Assembly (NCBI GenBank): GCA_965644495.1
Contig: CBFFSA010000015.1
Coordinates: 124,001-188,000, forward strand
DNA: 64,000 bases
Reading direction: 5' to 3'
DNA from: Perkinsela sp. CCAP 1560/9
Taxonomy: Eukaryota; Protista; Euglenozoa: Kinetoplastea
Made by a program: the position numbers and the translations under genes. Shown in pieces: positions 4,033-45,884 of this stretch (within the stretch, counting starts at the first letter, position 1; each line of letters starts with the position of its first letter). A model generated the notes under the pieces. The model was not told the DNA's origin, ran no database searches, and was given only the letters and a program-made list of their open reading frames with translations.

Positions 4033-4632
4033 TAATAAAGATACAGTACATCAATACTAAAGATACAGTTTCTGTACCTTGTTGGTACATTTTCCCTTTA
4101 GTTCATCTTTTCTTTCCCCGGCAACGGGCATAATCTTACTGTTTTATATGCCCGTTGCCGGCCGGCACTAAGGCCGAAACTGTCCCTCTTTCTCGGCGAA
4201 GTAGGGGACGCGCTTCCACCCCATCACCCCTCCCCGGCTCACTCCTTGAGTGGGTTTTCTTCCCTCCCCGGCTTTCTTCCCTTCGCGCCCTTTTCTTCCC
4301 GGGGAGCCATGCGCCATGGTGGCCTCCCTTGAGGACCACTGGGCGTGGCTCTGCCTCGCATTATCGCGAGGCAGCGGTCGGTTGCAGTGCGCCCCTCCGG
4401 CTGCGTAAAGAGGTGGTGAGTTGCCTGGACCACCTCTACCGACTGGGACCGAGTCGGTTGCAGTGCGCCCCTCCGGCTGCGTAAAGAGAGGGCGAGTTGC
4501 CTGGACCCCCTCTACCGACAGAGTCCGAGCTAAACCCCCTTGGTGCGACATCCGTCAATACGGATTGTGCCGATGATATCGGCTGTCGCATCCAGGGCTG
4601 TATCTCTGCTCCAACGAGCGCATGAACATCAA
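4033..4632 (+). mobile_element. SL-RNA-headed structured non-coding element, copy A (divergent subfamily, doubled head)
   Basis: Starts TAATAAAGATACAGT, then TAAAGATACAGTTTCTGTACCTTGTTG|GTAC (4058-4088). The 5' ~290 nt and 3' ~95 nt are homologous to the reverse complement of 26835-27450. The middle has a 76-nt tandem duplication (4377, 4453). Confidence 0.7.
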
Positions 4633-4903
4633 AACTGTGTACCGTCAATACTGCATACCATCACCACTGTAACCCCCTCGCTAATACACAAGTATGCACA
4701 TTTCTGTATATACACTGTACATACAGTAACGTTTCTGTATGAGTGTAAGTGTCTTGTTGTTGCAATTGCTGTTACAATGACGTAGTATTGACAAACACCG
4801 TACAGTCGTCAGCAATCAGAAATCTCTTTGTTCATTTCGCATCGTCTAAAAAACGAGCAGTCACCAGGAAGACCCATTCCGCAGAGTCACGAAACGCATT
4901 GCC

Positions 4904-5938: not shown

Positions 5939-6579
5939 GGTAAGAAATACGCGTGGAGTAGATTTTCGCTGCCCGTTTTGTGTGAAAAGGAGCTGCGAAA
6001 AAGATTGCCGTCTTGTTGCAGAAAAGCGTATGCTGAAGAGTAAAAGTAGGACTAGTGAAAGAGTTTAGAGAGAAATGAGAGGAAAAGATAGTGTAGAAAG
6101 AGAGCTGTTTGTAATTAAGACCCGTAAAGTGCCCTTTTTGGCCCATCTTAGTGTGTTTCACGCATGAAAATATTTTTTTTGAGTTCTGTGAGAAAAGAAC
6201 GAGCAGATGGGAAAACGTACAAATCGTAAATAGGCAGTCTCTACAGTAAAAAACAGTCTAACTGCAGTAATGTAAAATGGTACTGAACACCGTTCTCCGA
6301 TCTTCCAATCCTCACAGTGTATGCCGATTGACAGCACTGAATCCCCCCTTCACAGTAACAAAAAAGGTTTAAATGGAACCATTTTAGCCAATCAAAAAAT
6401 GTTATACGGCCCTTCCTTCATATTCATCTATTTACTTATTCTTCACTGTTTTCTCAATATGCAACCATGAGAACCAAAGACGAATAATTTTTTCTGAACC
6501 TTTTTATATCCTTTTTACTCACACGTCCTCTTTGCGTGATTTACACACAATCCCCCAAAAAACAAGCCCCCCACCCCCC

Positions 6580-7410
6580 TCAAAACTGCCCCCGCCCCCG
6601 CCCTCGATACCCTGCCGCACCCCGTCCCCGACCATACCCCCCACGCCCTCTCCCCGGCGCCATCATCATCCCACCCCCCGGATAATGACCCGGGTACCCC
6701 CCACGCACAAACCCCACAGGCGGAGGGGGACCCCCCATCCCCATCTCCCCCCCTCCCCCCATCTGTTGTTGTTGCTGCTGCTGCTGCTGCGCCCCCATCA
6801 GGTAACTCATCATCAGCAGCCCCATCGGGTCCGCGGGGGGGGTTGTTGCCGCTGCTGCCACTGTCGGGGGCAGCGCGCCCTGTCCCGCGTGCCCCCTCTT
6901 CCTCCCGGGCACGTTGCTGCGCTTCGGGGCGACCGCGAGCGTGCGGGCGCGGAGCAGCGCGAGGTGCTTGGTGCGCACCGCGGCCTCGGCCCCCGCGCGC
7001 TCGCGGAAGCACACGTAGGCGCGCCCGGTGGGGAGCAGCGTGTGGCTGTCGTGGAGCAGCGTGACGCGGTCGACGGGGCCGCAGTCGGATAAGTGGTTCG
7101 CGAGCTCCTCCTCGCTGGTGTTCCAGTCCAGGCCGCGGACGTAGACGGAGCGCGCGTCGGACTCGAGCTGCGCCGGGGTGGGGGTGGGGACGGGGAGGGG
7201 CGCATCGACAGTGTCGGTTTCGGAAGACGTGGGGGTCGTGGTGGTCGTCGCTGTGGTCGTCATGGTGGTGGTGGTGGGTTCAGAAGGTGCCGGGGGGGCT
7301 ACGGTTGAGGTCAGGGGGTCGGTGTCCATGGCGTGGGGGGTTTCGGAGGGGGAGGTACGGTCTTGGAGTTGTTTTTTGAGGGCTGCGATTTGTTGATCAA
7401 TTTCGTCCAT
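6580..7410 (-). CDS. PABPN1: Nuclear poly(A)-binding protein PABPN1/PABP2-like
   Basis: N-terminal coiled coil, single RRM (ESDARSVYV..LD....EEL..H...CG.V.RVTLL.D.....P.G.AYV.F...PKR.NVPG), RGG-rich tail. Confidence 0.8.
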   Translation of the reverse strand: MDEIDQQIAALKKQLQDRTSPSETPHAMDTDPLTSTVAPPAPSEPTTTTMTTTATTTTTPTSSETDTVDAPLPVPTPTPAQLESDARSVYVRGLDWNTSEEELANHLSDCGPVDRVTLLHDSHTLLPTGRAYVCFRERAGAEAAVRTKHLALLRARTLAVAPKRSNVPGRKRGHAGQGALPPTVAAAATTPPADPMGLLMMSYLMGAQQQQQQQQQMGGGGEMGMGGPPPPVGFVRGGYPGHYPGGGMMMAPGRGRGGYGRGRGAAGYRGRGRGQF

Positions 7411-7847
7411 GGGTGGTGAGAGAGAGAGAGAGAGGGTTGGGAGAGGGTGTGGGGGAAAGGGGGGAGGAGGTGATGGGGTGTAGGAAAGAGAAAAAAAGAA
7501 TGGGAGAGAGGGAGAAAGGAAAGGGGTTGGGTGAGAGGTGAGAAATAAGGAAAAAGCGTGTGGATGTAGAATATAGAATAAAAAAAGAATAACAAGTCGA
7601 ACGAGTGACGCAAATTTTCTGGGCTCATTGTTTGGGTTACGTGTTAGAATAAGGCCTCAGCCCTATCCGTACCCTCTACGTTGAACAGAACATTGATGTG
7701 GTTACGTGGCAGTGTATGAAGAGTCGAAACACGAAAAAGGAAAACAGGGGGTAGGACTTCAAGACTTCTCCTGTCGTTCAGCTCCTTTCTCTGATCTGTA
7801 ATTCAACGCCCCGCTTCTTCTGCCTTCGTAGTCTCATCTCTACTTGG

Positions 7848-9698
7848 TCACAGCGTTTCAGAATCCTTGCCCTTTTCTGATCCCCGTTTTCGGTTTTCCG
7901 AACCTGATTCTGCCCCAGCTCCCGTTTTCTCCACCCCCTCCTGCCCCTTCTCCCCCTCTTTCCCCCGCTCTCCAGACTCTTTATTCTCCCACACTTCAAT
8001 AAACGCCTCCCCGGCGGTACCATCGTCACGCTCCACCCCTCGTCGAATGTGAAACCGACCCCGGGCGGTGTCCCGCAGCAACCTCACGGTGGGATACCCC
8101 ACCGAGAGAAGATACGGTACCACATCTAAGGGAATCTCATCGAGTATCTCTACCGGGAGAGTACTCAGAAGATATTTAAGCGGCCACCGGGTGCCATCCT
8201 CCGGGAGTGCCTGCCGTACCGACTCCGCCACCATATCCTCCGTGATGTGAATATAAGAGGTGTGACGACGACGTACCGAGAGGCGTAACTCCTCCGGGGG
8301 CAAATTAAGCCCCCCCGTGGCCGTCGTATTCGCGGAAGACGACCCACTTGCCCCCGCCCCACTACTCCCCACCCCTTTTGCCACATAGCTCGGGTAGGCG
8401 TTCTTCACCGCCCGGCTGTAGGGGATCGTCACCTCAAACACATCCTTGTGCTTGCGTAGCCAGGCCACGATCCCCCCGTAGTACGCCGCCTCCTTGACCG
8501 CCCCCTTGGTGAGCCTTCTCGCGATCACCCCGAGCTGGACGTAGTGCCGCGGCACGGTGCATTTCAGCACCTGAAACAGCAGCGGGGTGCGACACAGTGC
8601 CGCCGGTGGGGCCCCCACCACCCCTTTCCCATCCATGACCAGAAACCCCGAGAGGTGGGCCTGGCACACCGCAATAAACTTCTCCAGCGGGAGTTTATGC
8701 GAGACCTCGGGGGGGACATTCACGTGGAAGGCCTTCCACGCCACGTGCCGGCGCCACTGCTGGTTCAGCACACTCGCGAGCGTGGCGTGGGCGAGCATGG
8801 CGTTCTCCATCGCCACGTCGGTGCGGATCCGACCGAGGTCGGGGATATCCACCCCGCGACGGAGACGCTTGATCGTGTGCCGACACCCCACCCCCGCCTT
8901 GGACTCGAGAAAGTCATTGAGGTACGGCAGGATGGCCCCCCACCGCGTCGGGATGTGTCGCTCCCGGACCTCCGCGGGGATCAGGGTGATGAGATCCGGC
9001 GCAATGGTCCAGTGCAGCGGGAGGTACCGCACAAGGAACATGGAGTGGTAGTGGAGGGTCTCCGGGGAGGCGGTGGGGCCCCCGCGGGGTCGCCCCACCC
9101 CCTCGAGCTCCTCCGCCTCCTCACTCTCGCTCACCTCCAGCTCCTTGGCGTCGGGGAGGGCGCTGACCTCCGCCTTGCGCGCCACAAGCATCCCCAGCGG
9201 GGAGAGGGTGAAGCGGGAGGGGAAGGCTTTCAGCACGGAGGCGATGCCGCCGTACTTGCGGATCTCTTTACGGTCCGAGGAGCGCAGGGAGCCGTAGAGG
9301 GTGCTGACCCCCGTGGAGGGGTGACCCTGTAGCGTGGCCTCGAGACGCTGTAGGATATCCACTGGACAGCCCTCGGGGTTGTCGAATTTTTGAGCCGGGG
9401 GGGCGCCGGGACGGGGGTCCCCGGGCTCGGGTTGCGTACCCACGACCTCGGCACCGGTGTAGTCGGCCCGGGAGACGGTTAACAGGTTTTTCACCCCCAC
9501 CGCTTTGAGGTTAAACACCTGCGGGTGGGCGCGGATAAAGTCCTTTAGACTTCCGTGGTCGGTGGCGATGGTTTCCATGACGGCGTCGGGGAGAAGGCGG
9601 GAGAGTTGAGCCAATGTCACTACGTCGTTTGGGGGGACAGCGGCGACGACGGTGGATACAACCCGTTCGCATAAGAGGTAGAGGTGTCGTCGAAACAT
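7848..9698 (-). CDS. Hypothetical, probably mitochondrial protein with repeated winged-helix (OST-HTH/LOTUS-like) modules
   Basis: First ATG gives MFRRHL, presequence-like. Three related motifs: HGSLKDFIRAHPQVF, YGGIASVLKAFPSRF, YGGIVAWLRKHKDVF. Long GC-rich ORF. The domain call is by eye. Confidence 0.55.
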   Translation of the reverse strand: MFRRHLYLLCERVVSTVVAAVPPNDVVTLAQLSRLLPDAVMETIATDHGSLKDFIRAHPQVFNLKAVGVKNLLTVSRADYTGAEVVGTQPEPGDPRPGAPPAQKFDNPEGCPVDILQRLEATLQGHPSTGVSTLYGSLRSSDRKEIRKYGGIASVLKAFPSRFTLSPLGMLVARKAEVSALPDAKELEVSESEEAEELEGVGRPRGGPTASPETLHYHSMFLVRYLPLHWTIAPDLITLIPAEVRERHIPTRWGAILPYLNDFLESKAGVGCRHTIKRLRRGVDIPDLGRIRTDVAMENAMLAHATLASVLNQQWRRHVAWKAFHVNVPPEVSHKLPLEKFIAVCQAHLSGFLVMDGKGVVGAPPAALCRTPLLFQVLKCTVPRHYVQLGVIARRLTKGAVKEAAYYGGIVAWLRKHKDVFEVTIPYSRAVKNAYPSYVAKGVGSSGAGASGSSSANTTATGGLNLPPEELRLSVRRRHTSYIHITEDMVAESVRQALPEDGTRWPLKYLLSTLPVEILDEIPLDVVPYLLSVGYPTVRLLRDTARGRFHIRRGVERDDGTAGEAFIEVWENKESGERGKEGEKGQEGVEKTGAGAESGSENRKRGSEKGKDSETL

Positions 9699-10136
9699 GA
9701 GGAAGGGGGGTGGGAAAGTACCCTGAGGATTGAGGGTGGGGTTAAAGAGCAAGAAAAAAGAGCAATTTCTAAAGAGAAAGAAAGAGAATAAAAGACAGTG
9801 AGACAGAAAAGGTACAGATATGTTTTTTTTTGCATGGATGAATAGTCAAGGAGAGTGGAAAATTCACAGAAAACAGATGATAAAATCGTTAGTTGTGTCG
9901 GTGTTTCTCAGTTTTTGTTAGAGAGAAAGTAGCAGTTAAGCAAGAATGGGTATCCGTTCGTCAAACTTTCGGTCCTAAGAGGATACATGTTGTCGTAGCC
10001 CAACAAGGCTTTCACAACTGCACCTGAAAATGCTTCCTGAAAAGAGTAGAGGTAGCCGATGTCCACAAGATTTTATATGCCAGAAAACGAAGGATTGCCC
10101 CCTACCATTTTCCTTCGCGAGTCGAATGGTGTTCGC

Positions 10137-13100
10137 TCACTGTAAATTCTTAAGCTTTAGACCTGGTAAGCGCTTGTTTGGCTTGTGTTCTGTTTGTTCC
10201 ATCGCGCACACGATTCCAAAACTGGGATGAAGAAGTACGTAGGGGTTGTAGTGTAACGCGTGGTGTTCTAGCTCATACTGGGCGTTCAAACACACCACAC
10301 CGTGTACCACCACGGGACGCTGACTCTTTACGTAGTTGCAAACCTCATCCCAAGTAGACTCCGGGCATTTGTAGTACCGCACCACGAATGTTTCCTTTGG
10401 TACAAAGTCGATGAAACACACCGATAAGCTCTTGGGCGCTTGCGGTTTCGTGGGGTCGCCCTTTGTTTTTTCTACTGGAGAACCTTCCCCGGGAACGGTT
10501 ATGGAAAACTGCACCACCTGCTGGGTGCCGACATATCCACGTTCGACTTCACTGACATGTCCCGCGAGTACAATACGGTTCACGCAGAGAGGAGAGGCGG
10601 CGACGGGGTTCACGAGCATCCGCATCCGGGCCTCCTCCTCTCCGAGATACTCCGAGTTGGAAGACGCGGCACGGAGCGCACGGTCCTGCCCGGCAGCAAA
10701 AACCCCCGCGACGTGTTCCGGACTCCGTGCGTTCTCTGTGAGCGAAGAGGGCAGAGAGGAGAGAGCGGGTAGTCCCTGTGTCGCGGAGGGGGTGGTACCG
10801 CCAGCTAGCATAGGCGAGGCGCCAGAAAAACCGTAAACATCCACTGCCCCTCCCTCCGGGAATAGCGGCATCGAGGTGGTGAAGTCCTGACCCGATAAAC
10901 CACCACCCTGTAGCTCGGAGGGCATCCCACCGAACGCACGTAGCACATCCGGGTGAACCGCTTTTAAGTGTTTCACCAGCGCGGTCTCGAGGCGGAATGT
11001 TTTTCCACACGCACAACACGTGGAGCGGGTCTCGGTGGTGGGCACGCCCGTGACTCCAGAAAAAGGAGAATCCGGCGGAATCGCTCTCTTTGCAATCTCC
11101 TCCGCCTCTCCTTCCAACGGGATCGGTTCTGCCGCACTCCCTCCCTTTTTCCACAAACTACTCACCGCGGAGCTCTTCGCATCCACCTCCGCGAACTGGG
11201 ACTTGCAATTCACCACCGTCCCGGAGGTATACGGGTTAAACGAGATCTGATTCCCCAACGTGTCACCTGACAAGATCCCCCCACTAATCCCCGTGGCGGC
11301 AAGATTCCGCAGTGACCCCGGGGCATACACCATCCCCGCAACCCCTTTCCCCGTCTCCGTACCCCCCACCGCCCCCTCACCCCCGGAGCCGAACTCACCC
11401 CCCACCCCCCCACCCGTCATTGACGTCCCCGACGGTGACGGGTTCACCATCGGGTTCATCATAAACGGGGCGGAGGGGGATGCTGTTGTTGTTGTTGTTG
11501 TTGCTGTTGTTGTTGTCGTAGCCACTCTCCCCATCCCCCTCCCCCTTCCCTCCCCTTGCAACACCCTCCCCATCCCCTCCACGCTGCCGAGGGTGGGGTT
11601 ACGCCCGAGGGCCTCTGTGGAGGCAGCGGCGTGGGGGGAGAGGACCCCGATGTTGGGGGGGGCAAAGGGACTGGGGCCCCCGCCGGGGACCCCCGGGGGG
11701 GAGAGGGGGGGGTAGTCGTCCAGGGAGGGCGTAGGGGTAGTAGTCGTAGGGGGAGTACTACTACTACTACTACTAGAGTAAGTGGAGGGAGCAGACGTAG
11801 TAGAGGGCAGGATAGCGGAGAGACCTGAGGGGGAGGCGGTGAAGGGGGAGGTCTCTAAGGCAGGGGTAGGGGTAGGGGTAGGGGTAGTGGTGGTGGGGTA
11901 GGGGGATGGAGGTGAGTTGAACGGAACGAAGGGGGAAGACAATGGAGCGGAAGGGAAGATTCCGAATGGAGAGGGGGAGGAGGGGGAGGGGGTGGTGTTG
12001 GTACCGGGGGTGTTGACTCCGGTAGAGGGTGATGGGGGGGAGGAGCGGGGGAAGGGGTCAGGAGGGATGGAGGAGGGCGTGGGGAAGGCAGAAGGGGGTG
12101 GGGTAAAGGGGGAGGAGGGGGGAGTGGGGGTGGTGAAGGGGTTCGTGGGGCTTGAGGAGGGTGGAAACGGGGAGGCGGGGGGAGAGGTTGTGGGGGAGGA
12201 GAAGGGAGAGGGAGACATGGGGGAGGTCCCCGGTATGGAGGGGGTACTTGGGACAGTGCCCGGTGGTAGGTTGCCTCCATGCATGGCTCTCCCTGTTTGT
12301 GGGAAATGCCCTGTCGTATTCTGTCCGGTGGTACTACCTGCGGTAAAAGGGTTTTGTGCGGAGATAAACGGATTTTCCTGACCCGGGAGGGGAGCACCTC
12401 CGAAGGGAGAGGGTAGCCCTGTGGCATTAGGAAGCATCCCAGGGCTACCTGATGCGGCTTGGGAAATTCCTGCAGGGCTACCTCCGACGGGAGCAGCTCC
12501 CCCATGCTCCACTACCATATGGTTTTTTAGTGCCACAGCAAAACGAAACGTTCGTCCACAGTGAGGACACTGGTTATTGTCCGGGGTTCCCGAGGGGGGG
12601 AAAGACGTTGATCCAAAGGGAAAGGCAGTACCCGAGCTGCCGGGTACTGTGGAGGCCGGAACTGTCTGTGCGTGCTCAGTTGTAGCTGAGGAGGTTGCTC
12701 TGAAGTATGAAGGACCAGAGTCGCTTTTTTCTTGGGAGAGATGGGGGTAAAGCCTGCGATGGGGATGTCCGGATGGGGGATAGGCAACCTCTGGAGTGAG
12801 AGGAGTTTGATGCTTTTTGTGCGCTTCCTCCAGCAACTCTTTGGCATAGTCAGAAGTATTGGCGCGGAAAGAGGTAACGTATGCACTAGTAGACGAAAAG
12901 CTTATCCATCGACGAGGGTGAACAAAAAACGAAAACGTGGTGCGCTGCACCCTGTGTGTCTGAACTCGAAAACCAAATTTTGTGGGTGAAACACTATAGC
13001 AAGGAAGATAAAGGGTGCAGGACAAGCTACAAAAGTTCCTCGCGTTCGAAGGTGAACACCCTTGTATGAGACAAAGCCTACTAGAAGTGGCATGACTCAT
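10137..13100 (-). CDS. KREPA2: RNA editing core complex KREPA-family protein (two C2H2 zinc fingers plus C-terminal OB fold), most like KREPA2/MP63
   Basis: CPHCGRTFRFAVALKNHMVVEH and CACGKTFRLETALVKHLKAVH; C-terminal VNRIVLAGHV..V.RGYVG...V.QF...V.G...LN......H..PYV...P..G OB-fold pattern. KREPA3 is not excluded. First ATG at 13100. Confidence 0.65.
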   Translation of the reverse strand: MSHATSSRLCLIQGCSPSNARNFCSLSCTLYLPCYSVSPTKFGFRVQTHRVQRTTFSFFVHPRRWISFSSTSAYVTSFRANTSDYAKELLEEAHKKHQTPLTPEVAYPPSGHPHRRLYPHLSQEKSDSGPSYFRATSSATTEHAQTVPASTVPGSSGTAFPFGSTSFPPSGTPDNNQCPHCGRTFRFAVALKNHMVVEHGGAAPVGGSPAGISQAASGSPGMLPNATGLPSPFGGAPLPGQENPFISAQNPFTAGSTTGQNTTGHFPQTGRAMHGGNLPPGTVPSTPSIPGTSPMSPSPFSSPTTSPPASPFPPSSSPTNPFTTPTPPSSPFTPPPSAFPTPSSIPPDPFPRSSPPSPSTGVNTPGTNTTPSPSSPSPFGIFPSAPLSSPFVPFNSPPSPYPTTTTPTPTPTPALETSPFTASPSGLSAILPSTTSAPSTYSSSSSSSTPPTTTTPTPSLDDYPPLSPPGVPGGGPSPFAPPNIGVLSPHAAASTEALGRNPTLGSVEGMGRVLQGEGRGRGMGRVATTTTTATTTTTTASPSAPFMMNPMVNPSPSGTSMTGGGVGGEFGSGGEGAVGGTETGKGVAGMVYAPGSLRNLAATGISGGILSGDTLGNQISFNPYTSGTVVNCKSQFAEVDAKSSAVSSLWKKGGSAAEPIPLEGEAEEIAKRAIPPDSPFSGVTGVPTTETRSTCCACGKTFRLETALVKHLKAVHPDVLRAFGGMPSELQGGGLSGQDFTTSMPLFPEGGAVDVYGFSGASPMLAGGTTPSATQGLPALSSLPSSLTENARSPEHVAGVFAAGQDRALRAASSNSEYLGEEEARMRMLVNPVAASPLCVNRIVLAGHVSEVERGYVGTQQVVQFSITVPGEGSPVEKTKGDPTKPQAPKSLSVCFIDFVPKETFVVRYYKCPESTWDEVCNYVKSQRPVVVHGVVCLNAQYELEHHALHYNPYVLLHPSFGIVCAMEQTEHKPNKRLPGLKLKNLQ

Positions 13101-16997: not shown

Positions 16998-18259
16998 CTA
17001 TACTTCACATATGCTTGTGCGATCGATCACCACCGTATGCAGAGTTTTAGGGAGAAGCGTCTTGTCAAGTACTCCGTGCAACTGAATGTTATTTTCCAAA
17101 CATAGTCTTTGCATGTGTGTAGGTAAGTTGTCAAAACGTACTTCGCCTTCGAAAGTATTGTCACTACAGTAAAGCATTTCTAACGACTGAGGTAGTCTCT
17201 GTAGATTAAGAGATCCAGTAAACATGTTCTGCCCCAGATGTTATGATCATACGCTCGTGGCGCAGAGATACGTCTCTCTGTGTGACGGCCGATACCATCG
17301 GCGCATGACCCGCATACGACGGGTGTCACACAGAGAGTGGAGTGCGAGGTAGGAGACGAGACGCCCATCGGTCATGCTACAGCACGTATAGCCATGGTTC
17401 ATGCTGCAACACGGTCAAGCCGTGGGTTCATGCTGTCAGATGGTCTATCGTGGATCATGATGCATCATGGGGAGGTCCGTTACCGCCGCACTCGCTACAG
17501 CATGTAGGGAGAGAGGGGTGCAAGTTCGCATCCCCTATACACGCATACAACGTGTCCTCCCGCTGTAGCACGCCCAGTGGTCCTCAAGGGAGGCCACCAT
17601 GGCGCATAGCTCCCGGGAGAAGAAAGCACGAGAAGGAGAGAGCCGGGGAGGGAAGATAGATATATGAGATTTCTCATACACGACGGTAAACAGGTCAAAT
17701 TTATGTTTCCTGAAAATTTGTTGTCATTAAGACTCAGATGTTGTAGACTCGCAGGAAGATGTGCTAGATCTACATTCCCTTCAAAACAATTCGCAGAACA
17801 ATAGAGTATCCTTAGCATGTGGGGCAAATGCTGCAGATCCAAATTACCCATAAATTCGTTCCTCCCGATTTCTATTTCACGCAAAGGTGTGGGCAAAATA
17901 CCTGTGGAGAATGGCCCTGTAAGTTTATTAACGTAAAAATTGCACGCGTATACGGTTTGTGGTAATGAATCCCACTGCGGTGTCCCTGTAAGTGCCATCA
18001 TATACCAATTGAGTCCCGTCACGTGTAAGTGATCGGCGCACGTTACTCCTGCCCACCTACAAGCTGGTGTGGATGTATTCCATGTGTGATGCGGATTTTT
18101 AATGTCCACAATGAATTGGACAAGCTCATATTCCTGAGGCAATTTCGCTCCTCGTACTTTTCCCGCCCGACTACGATACTGTGCGGCATCTGTATCATCA
18201 GCTGCGGTGTATGAACATAACAAGGTCGTGGATTTCAACGTGAAAATGCGTGAACTCAT
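16998..18259 (-). pseudogene. LRR-family gene disrupted by SL-element copy C
   Basis: LPQEYEL...WN..TPAC.W.GV.C cap and 22-aa LPxxLxxLxLxxNxFxG repeats. The frame resumes (HLGQNMFTGSLNL) after the 17240-17656 insertion. Confidence 0.8.
17240..17656 (-). mobile_element. SL-element family copy C (5'-truncated, lacks the SL head)
   Basis: Differs from 26835-27251 at only about four positions that I could see; same 3' end (GTATGATCATAAC). Confidence 0.85.
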
Positions 18260-25134: not shown

Positions 25135-25929
25135 TTAAAATTCCTCCCCGTTGGATTCCTGCCACGTTCCTTTTTCCCTCCGCGGCCCAAACACACGCCT
25201 TTCCTCCGCACCCTCCTCCCTCTCCCTAAGCCCCTCCTCCGCACTCCTCCTCACACTCTCCATTTCCCTCATCTCCTGCGCAAGAAACAAAAACACCCCC
25301 GGGTTCTTCCGCACACACCTCTCCACAAACCCCACCTCCCTTCCCAACCTCTCCCCCACAAACCGCCACATGGCGGGATCCCCCCCCACCGCCCTCTCCA
25401 CCACCTCCGCATCCTCCCGCAGCTCCTGCGCCACATAGGGCAGCACCGCCGCGTGCCCCCGCCCCACCAGCGCGAGCACAAACCCCCTGTCCGCCCGTAG
25501 CCCCCCCGAGGCGTGCTGGAACGCGCACGGGCGGGCGCCCACCGCCGCGGCCACGACGCTGCGGTGGGCCCGGAGCCGCCGCGAGACGTGCCGCAGCGCC
25601 ATGCCGTCGCGGCGGACGGCAGCGAGGGCGAGGGCGTCGTCGTCGCGGAGGGGCTCGGGGGCGTACCGCAGCGCGTGGCCGTGCTGGGCGACGGCGTAGC
25701 GCACGACGGGGGGGGAGGCGCGGAGGGGGGCGGGGAGCTCGCGGAGACGCCACCCGGCGCCGTGGAGGGCGGCGCGGAGCTGGGTGGCGTTGGGGGGGTC
25801 GTGGAGGGGGTGGGTGGTGGTGGCGTGGTGGAGGAGGGAGGCGGGGTCGAGGGCGGGGGTGGGGGGAGGGGGGAGGAGGAGGAGGAGGAGGAGGGAGGGG
25901 GGTGGGTGGGGAGTCGGTGGGTGGGACAT
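25135..25929 (-). CDS. DUF4116-repeat protein
   Basis: Repeats of V..AV..(H/D)G.AL.(Y/H)A...LR.D..(V/F)V. Confidence 0.75.
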   Translation of the reverse strand: MSHPPTPHPPPSLLLLLLLPPPPTPALDPASLLHHATTTHPLHDPPNATQLRAALHGAGWRLRELPAPLRASPPVVRYAVAQHGHALRYAPEPLRDDDALALAAVRRDGMALRHVSRRLRAHRSVVAAAVGARPCAFQHASGGLRADRGFVLALVGRGHAAVLPYVAQELREDAEVVERAVGGDPAMWRFVGERLGREVGFVERCVRKNPGVFLFLAQEMREMESVRRSAEEGLREREEGAEERRVFGPRREKGTWQESNGEEF

Positions 25930-26021
25930 GGAAAGGGGTGAGGGGGGTTGTGAGAAAAAGGGGATTATGGTAAAATGTGAGAGTGTGGGAGGAAGTTATT
26001 TCACTAAAAAGAGTAAGAAAA

Positions 26022-26340
26022 GGTCCGGTTTAGCGTACCCCGGTATGGTAATTTGTTTGGATAAAATGTTAAAAAAGTGATTACCAGCAAAAATTACCAG
26101 TAAGGGTTAATAATAGCACCAATAGAAATCATAGAAAAGAAAGAAAGCGTTAAATAGTAAAGAAAACAAATGGATAATGCTCTATAGAGTTGTGATCTAC
26201 GTGATGTACGTGGGCCACCTCGAACAAGAAGTCGACATCACACCTTCTCTGCCTGAAAAACCAGGGGGGGGGGTATGCTATCGACCTTGGGTCACGATAC
26301 CATACCCCCCCGGTAGGTCACAGGTATGCTAAACCGGACC
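26022..26340. mobile_element. Putative MITE
   Basis: GGTCCGGTTTAGCGTACC / GGTATGCTAAACCGGACC inverted ends; no clear TSD. Confidence 0.5.
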
Positions 26341-26834
26341 CCCATTTAGCTCTTATGGATGTAGTCAGTCAGTATCAGCCAGTGATAACCCATGTCAGTT
26401 CGTGTGAGCTAGAGTTGCAAAACACTGGCTAACGGGGCTTCCGCGTTTTTTTGAAAAGTAATTTTTTCGAAAGAAAAATGCTCGCCCATGGATCTCCAAT
26501 TTAGTCATTTTTTTTCGATTTTGGACCACCGAGACCCCTTCATGTGGGATCATGCGACACAAAATCATTTCCCAGAATGCGAATAAAAGAGTGCAAATAA
26601 AAGAATACAAATAAAGAGTACGAATAAAAATCTTGTCGACAAATATTTGAATCCCATGAGAAACTTCTTCAAGAAGTTCATAGGTGAGGTTAGTGTTCAC
26701 AGTGCTCAATCGAGATCGCACAGCCTCCGGGAGCAAGCTTATTTTTACCACACCAGAAAGCTCAACATTGTTACTCAAATCAAGGCTGAAAAGTAGAGGA
26801 AGGCACGTCAGGTCTTCGAATTATTGTCTTCGAG

Positions 26835-27450
26835 GTTATGATCATACGCTCGTGGCGCAGAGATACGTCTCTCTGTGTGACGGCCGATACCATCAGCGCA
26901 TGACCCGCATACGACGGGTGTCACACAGAGAGTGGAGTGCGAGGTAGGAGACGAGTCGCCCATCGGTCATGCTACAGCACGTATAGCCATGGTTCATGCT
27001 GCAACACGGTCAAGCCGTGGGTTCATGCTGTCAGATGGTCTATCGTGGATCATGATGCATCATGGGGAGGTCCGTTACCGCCGCACTCGCTACAGCATGT
27101 AGGGAGAGAGGGGTGCAAGTTCGCATCCCCTATACACGCATACAACGTGTCCTCCCGCTGTAGCACGCCCAGTGGTCCTCAAAGGAGGCCACCATGGCGC
27201 ATAGCTCCCGGGAGAAGAAAGCACGAGAAGTAGAGAGCCGGGGAGGGAAGAAAGCTCACTCGAAGAGAGCGAGCCGGGGAGGGGTGAAGAGTGCGAAGTG
27301 CGTCCCCTACTTCCGCGACAAAGAGGGACAGTTCCAGCTAGCCGTCAGCCGGAAACGGGCATTTAAAAGTAAGAATATGCCCGTTTCCGGGAAAAGAAAG
27401 GAAGGGCTAGCAAAATGTACCAACAAGGTACAGAAACTGTATCTTTATTA
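26835..27450 (-). mobile_element. SL-RNA-headed structured non-coding element, copy B (apparently full length, 616 bp)
   Basis: On the minus strand it begins exactly where the LRR frame stops (CAA CTG|TAATAAAGATACAGTTTCTGTACCTTGTTG|GTAC) and ends GTATGATCATAAC where the LRR frame resumes. Confidence 0.8.
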
Positions 27451-27577
27451 CAGTTGCAGCAAATTCCTTGGAAGCAGCGTTAAATCTAAAGCTCCTACCA
27501 AAAAATTACGTCCGACTGAAAGACATTCCATTGATAAAGGAAGAAGCGTCAGACAAATATTCCCTGTGAATCTATTA

Positions 27578-28493
27578 AACCACCGTCCGGGTTATTATAC
27601 CTAGGAGGTATAATAAGTGTCCCTAGGTATAATAAGTGTCCCTAGGTATAATAACTTTGCTTTGCAAAAAGGATAAAAAAAATTTCGCGCCGCTTCGCGG
27701 CGCGTTCTTCTTCACATTGCCCACAACAAGTTATGATCCATTTGTAAGTTTCCCTCGCGCGCCTGGGGAAACGTGTGCGAGTGGGGGGGTAAGATTGTTT
27801 TCTGGGGGGTCAGGGGTAAAAGAATATGAAATGCCACGAATACATGTATTTTCGTGGTTACTATACCCCAACTGATCAAAATTCTTGACAATGGATGTAA
27901 TGCAAACAGATAGTGGCAGACGGTGACAGATGGTGGCAGACAAAACCATACACTTCTGCAGTACATCCAATGTCAATCTGATTTCTTGGTAATTTTCCCT
28001 CATCAAACGCAACATTAAAATTTACGCGCAGTGAGTGGAAAAGATTGCTGCGACAACAAAGAGCATGCACCAGCATGCTTTTACGTGTCCAGGAGATGAA
28101 TTAACCCTTTCGGAGTGTATATGTTTGGGCGATCGTCCGTAATCCCGTCTTTGTGGCATAAATCAGGGGGGGGATCAGAAAAATTGTAAAAAATGCAAGA
28201 TTTTGTCTACCAAAAAACAATGTGATCTATGTGCATTCGAAAATCCAAACGCAGATTACGTGCCTGCACGTTCATGAGCCCTGTTCGAGTGCTCTCGAAT
28301 GCGCTATAACTTTCCAAAATGGGCCAAGTTTTACAAATTTTAGTCCCCTCCCACATCAAAGTTTACTGTCCTGTAAGTTCTGCACCCGCCTCTGAAGGTA
28401 GGGGGCGGGAGGTATAATAAGGACCCTAGGGACACTTATTATACCTAGGAGGTACAATAGGTGTCCCTAGGTATAATAACCCGGACGGTGGTT
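27578..28493. mobile_element. Non-autonomous TIR element with TA duplication
   Basis: Perfect 28-bp TIR AACCACCGTCCGGGTTATTATACCTAGG, subterminal ccctaggtataataa repeats, TA on both sides. Confidence 0.9.
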
Positions 28494-29213
28494 TATTATT
28501 TAAGTGCAATGTAGTGATTAAATTTGGAAGAGAAGTCAAATCCAATCCCTCACTAAACATATTCAAAGAAAGATTCAATATTTCAAGCTTCGGAGGAAGC
28601 CTGTCCAGTGGTGCTTCATTTATTAATACATTTTCCTCAACGTTGAGAATCTCAAGTGTTTGAGGAAGGTGCAAAAAGTTTAGAGAACCACACATTTCGT
28701 ATTGCTCCCAGTGAATTTCGAGAAATTTTGCCTAGTTCGTTGCAAAACACGCCGATCCATTCACAAGCAGGAGTGTTCGTGTTCCAAGATGGAAAGTAAG
28801 CCTTGGTTACATCCTTAACAAAATTTTCAAGCTCGTATTCTTGTGGCACAATGGCGCAACTGACCTTTGCAGTTTGTAAAGAAGGATTTATTTCAGAAGC
28901 CTCCACCAGAAAAGATACATGTACGTTCATTTGCAGAACTTAGAAAATCTAGAATTAAACCATTTAGTAAACAAATTGATTTTCAGTGTTTGCAGGAAAG
29001 GTAAACCACAAACCTACATGAAAAAACACCAACTTCGAATTTCATTGACACTTGTTCTATAAAAAAGAAGTCAAGTAAAGTAGCAAAAAAAGAACACTGC
29101 AAGCAAGAAGTGAGCATATTCATGGCAAGATTTATGTAGCAACAATGTTTAAAAACCTAAAAAAATATTGTATTCCACAAGCTTAAGTGCGCTATTCACA
29201 ATGAATTGTACTA

Positions 29214-34045: not shown

Positions 34046-35730
34046 ATGGGAAAACGACATAGATTAAACTTCCGTCATGTATCGCCCGAGCATGCATCCT
34101 ACGGCACACGGATTGTGAGCGCGCACGAAGTGCATCAAGGCAAGTCTATGAGGGAAACAGCATGTATGATGAATTGCGGAAAGAGCAGTGTTCATCGCTA
34201 TGTTGAGCGATTTGCCAAAACAGGTGATGTGCAACGGAAAAACTACGTACGTAGTCCTACGGTTATCACAGACGAGTTTAAGCAAACGCTTGTTACTCTT
34301 GTAGAGAGTGAACGTAGTAACCCGCACGGGTGTCCGGGATTTAAATGGGTGTACAAAAGACTTGATCGAAACCTCTACCCCTGCGGTCTCATGACTGTGA
34401 AACGAGCCTTGAAAAAGATGGGGTACGTCATGAAAACGATGATTCGAAAGCCTGTACTAACTCCTTTACATAAGGAAAACCGTCTGCGTCTCGCAGAATA
34501 TTTTGAAGGTCTGTCAGAGAGTCAACTTCAGAATGTCATCTGGACAGACGAAAAACTTTTTCGTTGCAGTACACACGGTAAAAAGATTACCTACCTCGCC
34601 CATAAGGACGATCCCGATCGTGAACCACCACCCCAAACTGATCGTTGGTATGGGGGGAAGGGTGTTCTTGTATGGATAGGTGTCAGCCTTAAATGGGGTA
34701 TACCACCTCATTGTTTTCACGAGTTTGGGGAGCACAACACCGTAAGTAATGACTCTTTTTTCAAGGTCATGAGTAAAAGGAACGGCTTTTTTAATTGGGT
34801 TCGGCGCCGACCATGTTCCATCATTGTTCTTGACAATGCACCGGGTCATGGGCAAACCTGTCGTGCGGGATTGCAAGCAGGCCTAAACATTATTGATTGG
34901 CCCTCAAAGTCACCTGACTTAAACTTGATAGAAAACTTGTGGTCAATCATGGATGACTACATTCATCATACCCCTGCCGGGTCGATGGGTAATTACCCAT
35001 TAGCGGGTCTGTGCGGGTAAATTACCCGGGTCTGTGACCCAGTTACCCGCACCGACCCACACAGACCCGCATCGGCGCACTAGCCATTAAATACAAAATA
35101 ATTTCCTCTCAAGTGTGCTGATTTGTAGGATTGGCACGGAATGCTCTATGTACAGAAACGGTATCTTTAGCGTTGAGGAATTCCTTCCATAAGAAGAATT
35201 CCCTCTACTGATTTTCTTGTGTCGCCCATCTATTTTTTTTATTTATTTTTTGGTGTGAACCCCCTAGGCCAACCAGAAGCCTACCCCTAACACCGCAATG
35301 GTACCAATTTTCTTTATTTTTTCTATGAATTTCATAGTTCTTTGCGTCCGAAAAATAGGCATGAATTGCGAGAGGCCATACCCAAGGTTATTGAATATCT
35401 CCTAACCGAAAAGCGGGATATCCTAGAGAAGACTCTGAAGAGCCTCCCAAAACGGTTAGAAGAGTTACGAAAGTGTAACGGAGGGGTTATTTCATACTAA
35501 ATAACTTTTTCAATGCCTTTTAAGACATTTTTATCCACATTTTCAAATGTGCAAATTTTGAAAAAAATCGTTTTTGTCGTACACACCCTACTTTTTAGAT
35601 GTGTTTAAATAGGCGCAAAATGTCGTTCCGATCATATTCGCGTCGAGATCTCTCTTTTGCAACAAAAATCAAATGAAACGGACACGTGGCACAAAAATGG
35701 CGGGTGTCCCGATATTGGTGATCCCCCCTG
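34046..35730 (+). mobile_element. Tc1/IS630-like transposon; transposase 34046-35500 interrupted near its C-terminus by a ~370-bp insertion
   Basis: HTH N-terminus, IWTDEKLF, LDNAPGH, WPSKSPDLNLIENLW. The C-terminus SLRPKNRHELREAI...NGGVISY* resumes at ~35338. Right end GGTGATCCCCCCTG+TA; left TIR not found. Confidence 0.85.
34966..35337 (-). other. Insertion carrying an SL-exon-like relic (35150-35174) and a hairpin cluster
   Basis: Minus strand AACGCTAAAGATACCGTTTCTGTAC; gcgggtctgtg/cacagacccgc stem with gggtaattaccc palindromes. Boundaries are uncertain by a few nt. Confidence 0.6.
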
Positions 35731-44029: not shown

Positions 44030-45113
<1,084 letters not shown>

Positions 45114-45884
45114 TAATGTGAGGGTTGGTAGTCCTAATCTGGGCTTACCCAGAGAGGGTCCACCAACCCGTCATTATCACGGCGCAGTAGACGCGCCATG
45201 GCAGGCCTGGCACCATGAAGGCCAGACAAAAAAAAATGACTTGACGCCTCCGGGCTTGAAACCCGGCCTGCACAAAATCCGAAAACTGTTTCGGCAGAAT
45301 TCAGGCAGATTTGATGGAGCGTGGAGCCGCTATTTGATACAGCGTGGAGCTGCTCGCATGGAGTGTGGAGCCGCTGCGTTGTCAGCGTGGAGTCATTCAT
45401 GCAAATTTGATCGAGTGTGGAGCCGCTGTTTGATACAGTGTGGAGCCGCTCGCATGGAGCGTAGAGCCGCTGCGTTGTCAGCGTGGAGCCATTCATTCAA
45501 ATTTGATCGAGTGTGGAGCCGCTGTTTGATACAGTGTGGAGCCGCTCGCATGGAGTGTGGAGCCGCTGCGTTGTCAGCGTGGAGCCATTCATGCAAATTT
45601 AATCGAGTGTGGAGCCGCCGTTTGATATAGCGTGGAGCCGCTCGCATGGAGTGTGGAGCCGCTGTTTTATCAGCGTGGAGCCACTCATGCTAACTTGATG
45701 GAGCGTGGAGCCGCTGTTTGATACAGCGTGGAGCTGCTCGCATGGAGTGTGGAGCCGCTGCGTTGTCAGCGTGGAGCCATTCATGCTAACTTGATGGAGC
45801 GTGGAGCCGCTGTTTGATATAGCGTGGAGCCGCTCGCATGGAGTGTGGAGCCGCTGCGTTGTCAGCGTGGAGCCACTCATGCTA

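What the first reader, a model, noticed from the sequence alone, without database searches (positions are those of the whole stretch)
26835..27450. Mobile non-coding element headed by a spliced-leader RNA exon and its splice donor (candidate SL-derived SINE)
Seen: the element's first 30 nt are TAATAAAGATACAGTTTCTGTACCTTGTTG followed by GTAC. The same head occurs at 4058-4088, and a headless near-identical copy lies at 17240-17656. There is no ORF, TIR or poly(A) tail. Known: the 39-nt kinetoplastid SL exon starts AACTAACGCT, has the core ATACAGTTTCTGTAC and ends ..TTG before a GT intron. Adding AACTAACGC to this head gives exactly 39 nt, so the element starts at about SL nt 10. TGTACC-TTGTT-GGTACA reproduces the SL stem-loop that spans the donor site, which points to an SL gene rather than a trans-spliced mRNA as the source. 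CRE1/SLACS/CZAR retrotransposons insert at about SL nt 11/12. Inference: a non-autonomous retroelement derived from SL RNA or from a CRE/SLACS-type insertion, now jumping outside the SL array. I know of SINEs from tRNA, 7SL, 5S, 28S and U snRNAs but none from SL RNA. In sense orientation it also places an SL exon plus GT donor inside a pre-mRNA.
Basis: partly seen in the sequence, partly recalled or inferred. Interest (0 to 1): 0.92.

Follow-up and report, generated by a model that had tools for sequence, protein, structure and literature searches.

The report
Spliced-leader-headed non-autonomous retroposon
This is a real, recently active 615-bp non-coding retroposon of a kinetoplastid-type protist that starts with the last 28 bases of the cell's own spliced leader. 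It is probably copied by R2-like LINEs that have the same truncated leader and the same 3' hairpin, so it is an unusual SINE-like parasite of a LINE, but its origin from the spliced-leader gene is not shown.

Summary
Window 26835-27449 (minus strand) is a 615-bp non-coding element. Its first 28 templated bases are identical to nt 11-38 of the genome's own spliced leader (SL) and are followed by GTAC.

It is mobile. One public run has the empty site, with 2 bp in place of the 615 bp and no target duplication. At least 140 heads are dispersed in the 21-Mb assembly. Many copies are 5'-truncated but keep an intact 3' end, which is the mark of target-primed reverse transcription.

Its 3' end is a motif (ATCTCTG, a 4-bp covarying stem-loop, then YATGA) that also ends R2-like LINEs in this genome. 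These LINEs have an RT, no APE hit in Pfam, and a C-terminal domain whose model matches R2 endonuclease structures. Both full-length copies of one such LINE also start at SL nt 11. That LINE and many SINE copies sit at the same position of leucine-rich-repeat (LRR) genes.

Origin from the SL gene is not supported. Only GTA matches the true intron (GTATGAG...), and the LINE carries the same head followed by unrelated sequence. T-runs argue against Pol III transcription, so it is SINE-like but not a canonical SINE.

First-stage notes flagged SL-headed elements elsewhere in this genome; none had been followed up. Verdict: new variant of a known kind, interest about 0.6.

The parts
26835..27449 (-). 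Complete element, subfamily A, 615 bp, a polymorphic insertion
   Evidence: A contig of run X2 skips exactly 26835-27449 and has AC in its place. At least 17 near-full-length copies at 96-100% identity lie elsewhere in the genome.
27421..27448 (-). Head: 28 nt identical to nt 11-38 of the organism's spliced-leader exon. Base 27449 is one extra A that is not SL.
   Evidence: 31-nt 100% match (SL 11-38 plus GTA) to both SL genes of locus L044. These columns are invariant in all five subfamilies.
27417..27420 (-). GTAC after the SL part. It looks like a donor, but only GTA is shared with the true intron (GTATGAG...).
   Evidence: No copy of the body was found with anything other than the SL head in front of it.
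27416..27432 (-). Hairpin I, TGTACC-TTGTT-GGTACA, spanning the SL/GTAC junction
   Evidence: Predicted in the MFE and consensus folds. The genuine SL RNA has the weaker GTACC/GGTAT version.
27349..27390 (-). 14-bp hairpin CCGGAAACGGGCAT / ATGCCCGTTTCCGG
   Evidence: Kept in all subfamilies, with one pair changed on both sides (C-G in 5 sequences, A-U in 4).
27318..27336 (-). 'Anti-SL' strand (GGAACTGT..CTCTTTGT) predicted to pair with SL nt 11-26. This closes a 130-nt 5' domain that begins at the element's first SL base.
   Evidence: The 5' 300 nt fold with z = -6.9.
27150..27216 (-). Conserved box hairpin (..GCCATGCGCCATGGTGGCCTCC..GGACCACTGGGCGTG..) at the end of the shared ~290-nt 5' module
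   Evidence: Several pairs keep pairing through changes on both sides. The 5' module is 78-92% identical between subfamilies while the middle is unrelated.
26835..26925 (-). Shared ~90-nt 3' module
   Evidence: A 525-613 aligns with the 3' end of subfamily B.
26835..26864 (-). 3'-terminal motif: ATCTCTG + stem-loop GCGC-CACGA-GCGT + ATGATCATAAC. No poly(A).
   Evidence: The same motif, with covarying stems GCGC, GCAC, GTAG and GCAG, ends all SINE subfamilies and the RLE LINEs L066, L058, L064 and L067.
4058..4635 (+). Complete copy of sister subfamily B, 578 bp, head starting at SL nt 12
   Evidence: Most genomic copies of this subfamily are 96-99.8% identical to it.
4033..4047 (+). Aborted or duplicated head (TAATAAAGATACAGT) 10 nt upstream of the B copy
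   Evidence: Similar stuttered 5' junctions occur in L007, L011 and L029.
17240..17659 (-). 5'-truncated subfamily A copy with an intact 3' end
   Evidence: 99% identity to query positions 197-616 (sequence).
27450..27560 (-). Upstream target flank: a leucine-rich-repeat (LRR) coding-type repeat read in the same sense as the element. Together with the downstream flank (26700-26834) it places the insertion between LxxL and xLxxNN.
   Evidence: My own translation of the sequence joined through the empty-site letters. The same relative position is seen in many other copies and in the LINE L083/L066.

Best explanation
The element is a non-autonomous non-LTR retroposon. It is SINE-like in size and copy number, and closest in logic to the R2 'SIDE' elements or to RIME/NARTc. 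It is copied by target-primed reverse transcription (TPRT) borrowed from R2-like LINEs of the same genome that carry a restriction-like endonuclease (RLE).

Shown:
- It inserts and is polymorphic.
- Copies share a fixed 3' end and have variable 5' truncations.
- At the one site with an empty allele there is no target duplication and 2 bp are lost.
- Its 3'-terminal stem-loop motif is the one that ends RLE LINEs.
- One such LINE starts at the same SL nt 11 and sits at the same position of LRR-gene repeats.

Inferred:
- The LINE protein recognises the 3' stem-loop to start reverse transcription at a nick in LRR-type targets.
- The conserved, strongly structured 5' module, whose closing helix uses the SL bases, serves the 5' steps (protein binding, second-strand cleavage or defining the 5' end), as the 5' RNA does in R2.
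- The SL(11-38) head is a 5' signature shared by this LINE/SINE system and inherited as DNA. It most likely goes back to an SL carried on an RNA template. A trans-spliced transcript is favoured, because the LINEs carry the same head in front of unrelated sequence.
- The GT after the head is then a coincidence, or at most a 3-nt remnant.
- Transcription is probably read-through Pol II, not Pol III.
For: Mobility:
- Empty-site contig in run X2.
- 140 dispersed heads.
- Copies 96-100% identical.

TPRT signature:
- At least 11 copies start between positions 138 and 261 and end at the normal 3' end.
- Terminal 11-14-nt duplications in L020 and L026, and stuttered heads in L007, L011, L029 and window 4033-4047.

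Partner LINE:
- Tail motif shared with LINEs, with compensatory stems. The stem-loop and flanking motif of SINE subfamily C are near-identical to those of LINE L066.
- The LINE has an RT and no Pfam hit for an APE endonuclease in its 936 N-terminal residues.
- Its C-terminus has CCHC, RHN, PD, ELT and K..KY motifs conserved among its relatives.
- A model of that C-terminus (pLDDT 80.8) matches R2 proteins at Foldseek E 1.5e-6 to 1.4e-4.
- Both full-length copies of this LINE start ATAAAG = SL nt 11.

Common target:
- LINE L083/L066 and many of the sampled SINE copies lie in the same register of LRR repeats, in sense orientation.

Structured 5' module:
- z = -6.9, 12 pairs with changes on both sides.

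Against Pol III:
- T4 runs at positions 35, 55 and 82.
Against: - No LINE with exactly the A/B-type stem (GCGC..GCGC) was found among the 30 RT loci I could read.
- Apart from the head and the tail motif, the SINE shares no sequence with the LINE, so trans-mobilisation is inferred, not demonstrated.
- How an RNA with a 5' end inside the SL is made is unknown.
- A few copies have longer heads, back to SL nt 2-8. So the template, or some templates, carry more SL than nt 11-38.
- The perfect 6-bp hairpin across the SL/GT junction, and the absolute conservation of the head in subfamilies that differ by 10-22% elsewhere, could mean the junction is functional and not a coincidence.
- No RNA data were available. 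The only run guessed to be RNA gave three small contigs.
Confidence: 0.62

Rival explanations
1. The head comes from an SL RNA gene or from unspliced SL RNA (exon plus donor). For example, an ancestor inserted just after the donor of an SL gene, was transcribed from the SL promoter as an SL-GTA-element chimera, and that RNA became the master.
For: - The 31-nt identity includes GTA.
- The element keeps, and even improves, the donor-spanning hairpin of SL RNA.
- Unspliced SL RNA is retroposed in this genome. Five dispersed copies of SL plus true intron plus an A-rich tail exist.
- Some element copies carry heads back to SL nt 2-8.
- No SL-less copy with an AG acceptor exists.
Against: - Beyond GTA there is no similarity to the intron.
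- The partner LINE has the same truncated head followed by unrelated sequence.
- Several other SL-headed families also continue with GT.
- No copy lies inside an SL gene in the assembly. The seven SL-plus-true-intron loci are all accounted for.
Confidence: 0.25
2. It is an internally deleted derivative of its partner LINE, as RIME is of ingi, NARTc of L1Tc, or SIDE of R2. In that case head and tail are simply the LINE's own ends.
For: Same SL(11-38) start and same terminal motif as the LINE.
Against: The ~260 nt after the head and the ~60 nt before the tail motif have no match in the sampled LINE sequences. Only 30 of more than 1000 RT candidates could be read.
Confidence: 0.1
3. The 5' domain is a self-cleaving (HDV-like) ribozyme that cuts read-through transcripts at about SL nt 10/11, as in R2. 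The same has been reported for L1Tc Pr77 (recalled, not checked here). This would explain the fixed start.
For: In subfamily A the element's first SL base is the first base of the closing helix of a very stable domain. Head starts cluster at nt 10-12.
Against: - No Rfam ribozyme match, even at E up to 5.
- The pairing of nt 11-14 is not kept in subfamilies B-E.
- I could not thread a convincing double pseudoknot by eye.
- Heads range from nt 2 to nt 16.
Confidence: 0.08
4. The block is only a piece of the SL gene repeat unit, or the SL flank left by a CRE/SLACS-type insertion, or a dispersed functional SL RNA gene.
For: None beyond the 31-nt match.
Against: - The 297-bp SL gene unit shares nothing else with it.
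- In the window, no retrotransposon poly(A) lies upstream of the head.
- The empty site shows that the 615 bp insert as a unit.
- The first 10 SL nt, including the cap-4 positions, are missing. There is no SL promoter context.
Confidence: 0.01

Closest known systems
R2 SIDEs (short internally deleted elements of R2) and the R2 5'/3' RNA protein-binding motifs
   Same: Non-coding parasite of an RLE LINE. It keeps a structured 5' module and the 3' end that the RT would recognise. No poly(A). Insertion at a specific repeated target with loss of a couple of bases and no duplication.
   Different: The body is not derived from the LINE. The target is an LRR-gene repeat, not rDNA. The 5' module begins with spliced-leader sequence and has no demonstrated ribozyme.
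RIME / NARTc / SIDER, sharing the 5' 'Pr77' signature with ingi / L1Tc in trypanosomatids (PMC8190864, PMC2323293)
   Same: A kinetoplastid LINE and its short non-autonomous elements share a short 5' signature and a 3' end.
   Different: Those belong to the APE-type ingi clade and are described as carrying poly(A) tails and target duplications (recalled). Their signature is Pr77, not an SL fragment.
CRE1/CRE2/SLACS/CZAR (CRE clade), RLE LINEs that insert in SL RNA genes (PMC12278014)
   Same: RLE-type LINEs of kinetoplastids linked with the SL. The head here starts at about the SL position where those elements are reported to insert (nt 11/12, recalled).
   Different: Here the elements are outside SL genes. 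They carry the downstream SL part at their own 5' end, whereas CRE elements have the upstream part in front of them. A search with the LINE's RT-to-C-terminus region returned no hit that a source names as CRE or SLACS; the nearest hits outside the closest group were unnamed or R2-named at 25-29% identity. Clade membership is unresolved.
Relict spliced leaders on retrogenes of dinoflagellates (PMC6050394, PMC5585692)
   Same: DNA-encoded SL remnants at the 5' end of retroposed copies mark passage through a trans-spliced RNA.
   Different: Those are host retrogenes. Here the relic heads a self-propagating LINE/SINE system, is always truncated at the same place, and is perfectly conserved.
Canonical SINEs (heads from tRNA, 7SL, 5S; rarer snRNA or 28S heads)
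   Same: Short, non-coding, high copy number, LINE-matching 3' end, head taken from a small cellular RNA sequence.
   Different: No Pol III promoter. T4 runs sit inside the first 90 nt. The SL part lacks its first 10 nt and the gene's upstream promoter.

Membership tests
Non-LTR retroposon copied by target-primed reverse transcription | Constant 3' end with variable 5' truncation among copies | tested here: met
   copies cover 138-616, 140-616, 143-616, 159-610, 197-616, 209-616, 261-616 and others. Full copies start at positions 1-44.
Non-LTR retroposon copied by target-primed reverse transcription | Discrete insertion with a demonstrable empty site | tested here: met
   a contig of run X2 joins 26834 to 27450 with AC in between. 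125 nt flank the joint on its shorter side.
Non-autonomous element | No coding capacity | tested here: met
   Longest ATG ORF is 85 aa. The central part differs between subfamilies.
SINE in the strict sense | Pol III transcription from an internal promoter in a tRNA, 7SL or 5S head | tested here: not met
   No tRNA. No tRNA, 7SL or 5S match in Rfam. T4 runs at positions 35, 55 and 82 would stop Pol III. Expression itself was not tested.
SINE/LINE partnership | 3' end shared with an autonomous LINE of the same genome | tested here: met
   Motif ATCTCTG-stem-loop-YATGA in all subfamilies and in LINEs L066, L058, L064 and L067. The stem-loop of subfamily C is near-identical to that of L066. Actual trans-mobilisation was not tested.
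   Identity stops after GTA. For the next 90 nt, 358 of 500 (subfamily A) and 94 of 500 (subfamily B) shuffles score at least as well.
   28/28 identity to SL nt 11-38 of the SL genes next to 5S rRNA. The 5' end of the SL is inferred, not mapped.
RLE (R2-like) LINE, for the partner | RT followed by a CCHC knuckle and a PD-(D/E)XK endonuclease, with no APE | tested here: met
   RT. No Exo_endo_phos hit in the 936 residues before the RT. Conserved C..C..H..C, RHN, PD, ELT and K..KY columns. The model matches R2 structures at E 1.5e-6, TM about 0.6.
CRE clade (CRE1/SLACS/CZAR), for the partner | Insertion inside SL RNA genes, and RT phylogeny within the CRE clade | tested here: not met
   The LINE copies read lie in an LRR gene (L083) and in unrelated DNA (L084). 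No CRE- or SLACS-named relatives appeared among the hits. No phylogeny with reference CRE sequences could be made.

The most novel reading that the evidence does not exclude
A lineage of SL-gene-specific RLE retrotransposons escaped from the SL array to a new multicopy target, the LRR-gene repeat, while carrying the downstream half of its old target (SL nt 11-38) as a functional 5' signature. That signature, held in a helix with an 'anti-SL' strand, is what the LINE protein or a processing activity recognises at the 5' end. A non-coding parasite has captured both it and the 3' hairpin. Because copies insert in sense inside transcribed genes, each also plants a near-complete SL exon with a GU donor in a pre-mRNA.
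Probability: 0.25. Interest if true: 0.8.

Novelty: new variant of a known kind. Interest (0 to 1): 0.6.

Why it matters
I found no description of a SINE-like family headed by spliced-leader sequence, or of LINEs that carry a truncated SL as a fixed 5' end, in five full-text paper searches. Kinetoplastid retroposon biology is built on four clades known from trypanosomatids (PMC12278014).

This system offers three things:
- A natural LINE/SINE pair of the R2 type with a simple, covarying 3' recognition hairpin.
- A clear insertion polymorphism and a repeated protein-coding target.
- A way to ask how an RNA with a 5' end inside the SL is made, and whether an SL exon plus donor placed inside genes is ever used by the trans-splicing machinery.

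It is also a warning for annotation. SL-like sequences in this genome (508 cores) are mostly retroelement heads, not SL genes.

Tried and rejected
- Large element starting at 4058. I first suspected this because 4-14 kb is GC-rich. The ORFs there are on the other strand and are not RT (zf-C2H2, RRM). The 4058 copy ends at 4635.
- Rfam. Nothing at gathering score over the whole window, and only noise at E up to 5 on the element. No hammerhead, HDV-like, tRNA, 7SL or 5S match.
- The poly(A)-tailed SL-headed LINE of L031/L052 as partner. Rejected because its tail is different.
- The tails at C1:394-407 kb with 5.2-kb spacing. They are not LINEs. There is no long ORF and no head, so this is probably a segmental repeat that holds a truncated copy.
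- An SL-less master copy with an AG acceptor before GTAC. None found; the one hit was a chance match.
- The LINE C-terminus against solved structures by sequence. Nothing. Only the fold search found R2.
- Literature search for the head sequence itself. No paper.
- Organism. It could not be named because the runs are coded. A Tc-38 domain gene in the window and the SL point to a kinetoplastid.
- Data limits. I therefore could not read the long-headed copies at C14:310678 and C19:15573, or the 5' ends of the L058-type LINEs.
Full report
**1. The observation**

On the minus strand, window 27449-26835 reads A, then ATAAAGATACAGTTTCTGTACCTTGTTG, then GTAC, then about 580 more non-coding bases. The same head opens a second unit at 4058 on the plus strand. 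A copy without a head lies at 17240-17659.

The SL core ACAGTTTCTGTAC occurs 3 times in the window against 0.05 expected. It occurs 508 times in the 21-Mb, 110-contig assembly, against 0-1 for the reversed pattern. The 27-mer spanning core, exon end and GGTAC occurs 140 times on all large contigs.

The window encodes a Tc-38 (p38) domain protein. Together with the SL, this places the organism among kinetoplastid-type protists. The public runs that hold the sequence have coded names.

**2. The organism's real spliced leader**

Only seven places in the assembly have the exon followed by a trypanosomatid-like intron, GTATGAGAAGCTTCG....
- Two are tandem (297-bp unit) at C1:661.3 kb, about 0.4 kb from a 5S rRNA gene (99 bits). 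I take these as genuine SL RNA genes.
- The other five are dispersed. They start at SL nt 2-3 and end in A-rich tails, so they look like retroposed SL RNA.

The gene reads ...GTTAACTTTAACGATAAAGATACAGTTTCTGTACCTTGTTG|GTATGAG. By analogy with other kinetoplastids the exon would be AACTTTAACG...TTG, 38 nt. Its 5' end is not mapped, and some retro-copies suggest AACTAACG or AACTTAACG variants.

In this numbering the element's head is SL nt 11-38, with 28 of 28 bases identical.

In the read data the bin holding the head is roughly 500-1000 times deeper than flanking single-copy DNA. This suggests the SL array is collapsed in the assembly, though summed contig depths are a crude measure.

**3. It is a mobile unit with defined ends**

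Contigs of four public runs were laid on 25600-28900. One contig of run X2 (3.5 kb, depth like the flanks) joins 26834 directly to 27450 with the two letters AC in between.
- The 615 bp are therefore an insertion that is absent from one sequenced sample.
- In the sense of the element, the empty site is ...CAACTGT-GT-CTCGAAG....
- There is no target-site duplication, and two target bases are missing in the filled allele.

Genome-wide, subfamily A has at least 17 near-full copies at 96-100% identity. At least 11 further copies begin at positions 138-261 and run to the normal 3' end. That pattern is the classical product of target-primed reverse transcription.

Other traces of a reverse transcriptase:
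- Duplicated terminal 11-14-mers in L020 and L026.
- Stuttered heads in L007, L011, L029 and window 4033-4047.
- Head-to-tail stacks such as the B-A pair of L024/L025.

**4. Family structure**

At least five subfamilies exist: A (615 bp), B (578 bp), C (~650 bp), D and E, plus A/B hybrids.
- They share the first ~290 nt at 78-92% identity and the last ~90 nt. The middle is unrelated.
- The SL part and GTAC are invariant in all of them, apart from one G-to-C change in the E copy L050. The mean column identity of the 5' module is 71%.

The 5' 300 nt fold far better than shuffles (-124.5 kcal/mol, z = -6.9).

The consensus fold has these features:
- The donor-spanning hairpin TGTACC/GGTACA.
- A 14-bp hairpin with a pair changed on both sides (C-G in five sequences, A-U in four).
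- A box hairpin with several such changes. In all, 12 pairs show changes on both sides.
- A long-range helix in which SL nt ~15-26 pair with a conserved 'anti-SL' stretch, GGAACTGT..TCT.

In subfamily A this helix extends to the very first SL base of the element. Because the SL side never varies, this helix cannot be tested by covariation.

**5. The 3' end and the partner**

All subfamilies end in ATCTCTG, a 4-bp stem with a 5-8-nt loop, then YATGA and a short A-rich end. There is no poly(A).

The genome is packed with retroelements: more than 1000 RT candidates, 150 scored, many with open frames of 1100-2800 aa. Among 30 RT loci that I could read, four end in the same motif.
- L066: stem GCAC..GTGT. 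Its stem-loop and flanking motif are near-identical to those of SINE subfamily C.
- L058, L064 and L067: stem GTAG..CTAC.
- A further tail, L033, has GCAG..CTGC.

The stems GCGC, GCAC, GTAG and GCAG keep pairing through compensatory changes, while the flanking ATCTCT and ATGA stay fixed. This is what one expects of an RT recognition hairpin.

The L066/L083 LINE is about 5.06 kb and has one long ORF (1637-aa open frame).
- It has an RT.
- It has no APE-endonuclease hit in the 936 residues before the RT.
- Its C-terminal region has C-x2-C-x8-H-x4-C, RHN, RPD, ELT and K..KY motifs conserved in a 12-sequence alignment.
- A model of that region (pLDDT 80.8) finds the R2 retrotransposon proteins as its seven best PDB matches (E 1.5e-6 to 1.4e-4, TM about 0.6), followed by PD-(D/E)XK endonucleases.

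It is therefore an R2-like RLE LINE. Whether it belongs to the CRE clade is open. A search with its RT-to-C-terminus region returned no hit that a source names as CRE or SLACS; the nearest hits outside the closest group were unnamed or R2-named at 25-29% identity.

**6. The LINE has the same truncated head and the same target**

Both full-length copies of this LINE subfamily begin ATAAAGATACAG...CCTTGTTG, that is at SL nt 11, and continue AATTATTTTTCAATTTTG and then the ATG.

Among 32 independent SINE junctions (34 tallied, the L024/L025 pair being read twice), the head starts at these SL positions:

| SL nt | 8 | 9 | 10 | 11 | 12 | 13 | 15 | 16 |
|---|---|---|---|---|---|---|---|---|
| copies | 2 | 1 | 7 | 9 | 7 | 3 | 2 | 1 |

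A few other copies reach nt 2-7 (L046, L050, C14:310678, C19:15573). Extensions beyond nt 11 are more frequent than chance matches of the flank would give, so at least some templates carry more of the SL.

The LINE copy L083/L066, the window copy and many of the other SINE copies sit in leucine-rich-repeat coding sequence. They lie in the same sense as the repeat and between 'LxxL' and 'xLxxNxFxG'.
- A simple motif scan marks about a third of the junctions. By eye the share is about half.
- For L021 the two flanks join in frame without gain or loss (my reading).

A shared truncated head, tail motif and target register are the main reasons to pair this SINE-like family with these LINEs. Direct mobilisation in trans has not been shown.

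**7. Where the head came from**

The element matches the SL gene over 31 nt (SL 11-38 plus GTA) and nowhere else. The following 90 nt align to the intron no better than shuffled sequence.

In favour of a trans-spliced RNA as the source:
- The LINEs carry the same head in front of unrelated sequence.
- Another LINE family carries SL nt 3-38 in front of a similar AATT... leader and ends in poly(A).
- Several SL-headed families continue with GT (GTTG, GTTT, GTCT, GTGG).
- Tandem SL cores 18-40 nt apart at other loci look like repeated rounds of SL addition, as known for dinoflagellate retrogenes (PMC6050394).

These points make an SL acquired on an RNA the more economical origin, and the GT a coincidence.

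Against full confidence:
- No copy of the body exists without the head, and TTG|GTAC offers no AG acceptor. The head is therefore now inherited as DNA.
- Its perfect conservation and the perfect hairpin across the junction suggest function.
- Unspliced SL RNA is itself retroposed here.

I give the trans-spliced or SL-on-RNA origin about 0.55-0.6 and the SL-gene or unspliced-SL origin about 0.25.

**8. How it most likely works**

Shown: insertion, 3' anchoring, 5' truncation, no target duplication with a 2-bp loss at one site, motifs shared with an RLE LINE, and a shared target.

Inferred, by analogy with R2:
- The LINE protein nicks the antisense strand of an LRR-type site and binds the 3' stem-loop of the RNA to prime cDNA synthesis.
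- A second step at the 5' end uses the structured 5' module, of which the SL bases form the closing helix. This step cuts the other strand 2 bp away and completes the insertion.
- Stacks arise because the downstream half-site survives.

Transcription is probably read-through from Pol II units, since copies lie in sense within genes and the T4 runs argue against Pol III. How the 5' end near SL nt 11 is produced is unknown. The candidates are a processing or self-cleavage event (no support from Rfam), termination of reverse transcription at the domain, or cleavage of the copied SL by an endonuclease that descends from SL-gene-specific ancestors. The last idea links the nt-11 start with the nt 11/12 insertion site of CRE/SLACS/CZAR, which I recall from the literature. 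It is attractive but untested.

**9. Comparison, novelty and verdict**

It works like an R2 SIDE or like RIME/NARTc. It fails the strict SINE definition because it has no Pol III head. I found no description of SL-headed LINE/SINE systems in five full-text paper searches. The recent mobilome survey of trypanosomatids lists only the INGI, CRE, VIPER and TATE clades (PMC12278014).

First-stage notes of this scan had already flagged SL-headed retroelements on other pieces of this genome, including a 'structurally conserved non-coding mobile element (tandem pair)'. None had been followed up.

I rate it a new variant of a known kind. Interest is about 0.6.

**Limits**
- No RNA evidence.
- The SL 5' end is inferred.

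Noticed in passing
window 27575-28492 (terminal repeats about 27580-27650 and 28420-28491): A second presence/absence polymorphism right next to the finding. A 918-bp non-coding element with long terminal inverted repeats (CCACCGTCCGGGTTATTATACCTAGG...) is skipped by contigs of runs X2 and X4. It looks like an active MITE-type DNA transposon. The same terminal sequence follows SINE subfamily D in L018.
   Followed up: partly
window 26042-26314: Run X2 has a contig that skips 273 bp here, with 13 other letters in between. This is another indel or replacement polymorphism of unknown nature.
   Followed up: no
window 34046-35020 (+) and 45824-47962 (+): ORFs with Tc1/mariner-type (DDE_3, HTH_Tnp_Tc3_2) and pogo-type (DDE_1) transposase domains. 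The trypanosomatid mobilome survey I read lists only retrotransposons, so DNA transposons stand out in a kinetoplastid-type genome.
   Followed up: no
G000:C1:661299-661650 (L044) and the depth table: Only two tandem SL RNA genes (297-bp unit, beside a 5S rRNA gene) are in the assembly. The SL-head bin is roughly 500-1000 times deeper than single-copy flanks. The SL array is probably collapsed or missing from the assembly.
   Followed up: partly
L045, L047, L048, L049 (C2:801.6 kb, C20:10.9 kb, C25:23.9 kb, C49:34.4 kb): Retroposed copies of the whole SL RNA (exon plus true intron up to the 3' stem-loop) followed by A-rich tails or short tandem repeats. LINE machinery in this genome copies unspliced SL RNA.
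   Followed up: partly
genome-wide list: In SL-headed elements the bases before TAACG vary (CTT, ATT, AGT, ACT, AAT, AGC...) while the rest of the SL is invariant. The variable positions correspond to the cap-4 nucleotides of kinetoplastid SLs. This would fit misincorporation by reverse transcriptase opposite modified bases.
   Followed up: no
C1:44382/44422, C4:505026/505048, C22:25575/25593, C46:10633/10667: Pairs of SL cores only 18-40 nt apart, that is tandem SL relics. This is what repeated rounds of trans-splicing and retroposition would leave.
   Followed up: no
genome-wide: More than 1000 reverse-transcriptase candidates in 21 Mb, many with intact frames of 1100-2800 aa. This is an exceptionally retroelement-rich small genome, or a repeat-rich part of one.
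   Followed up: no
subfamily A copies listed: Six of the 5'-truncated copies start within positions 138-143. This lies just 3' of the closed 5' domain and inside a GC-rich hairpin arm. It may be a stalling site for reverse transcriptase.
   Followed up: no
window 4900-13100 (minus strand): A GC-rich block (53-60% GC against about 40% around it) with long ORFs carrying zf-C2H2, RRM and weak RPC4-like hits. It is not part of the element at 4058.
   Followed up: partly
window 44150-45970: Long GA/GAAA-rich microsatellite arrays and a 96-bp tandem repeat with strong purine strand bias.
   Followed up: no
L044 461-659 (+): A degenerate, 5'-truncated copy of the SINE lies a few hundred bases from the genuine SL genes, in the opposite orientation.
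   Followed up: no
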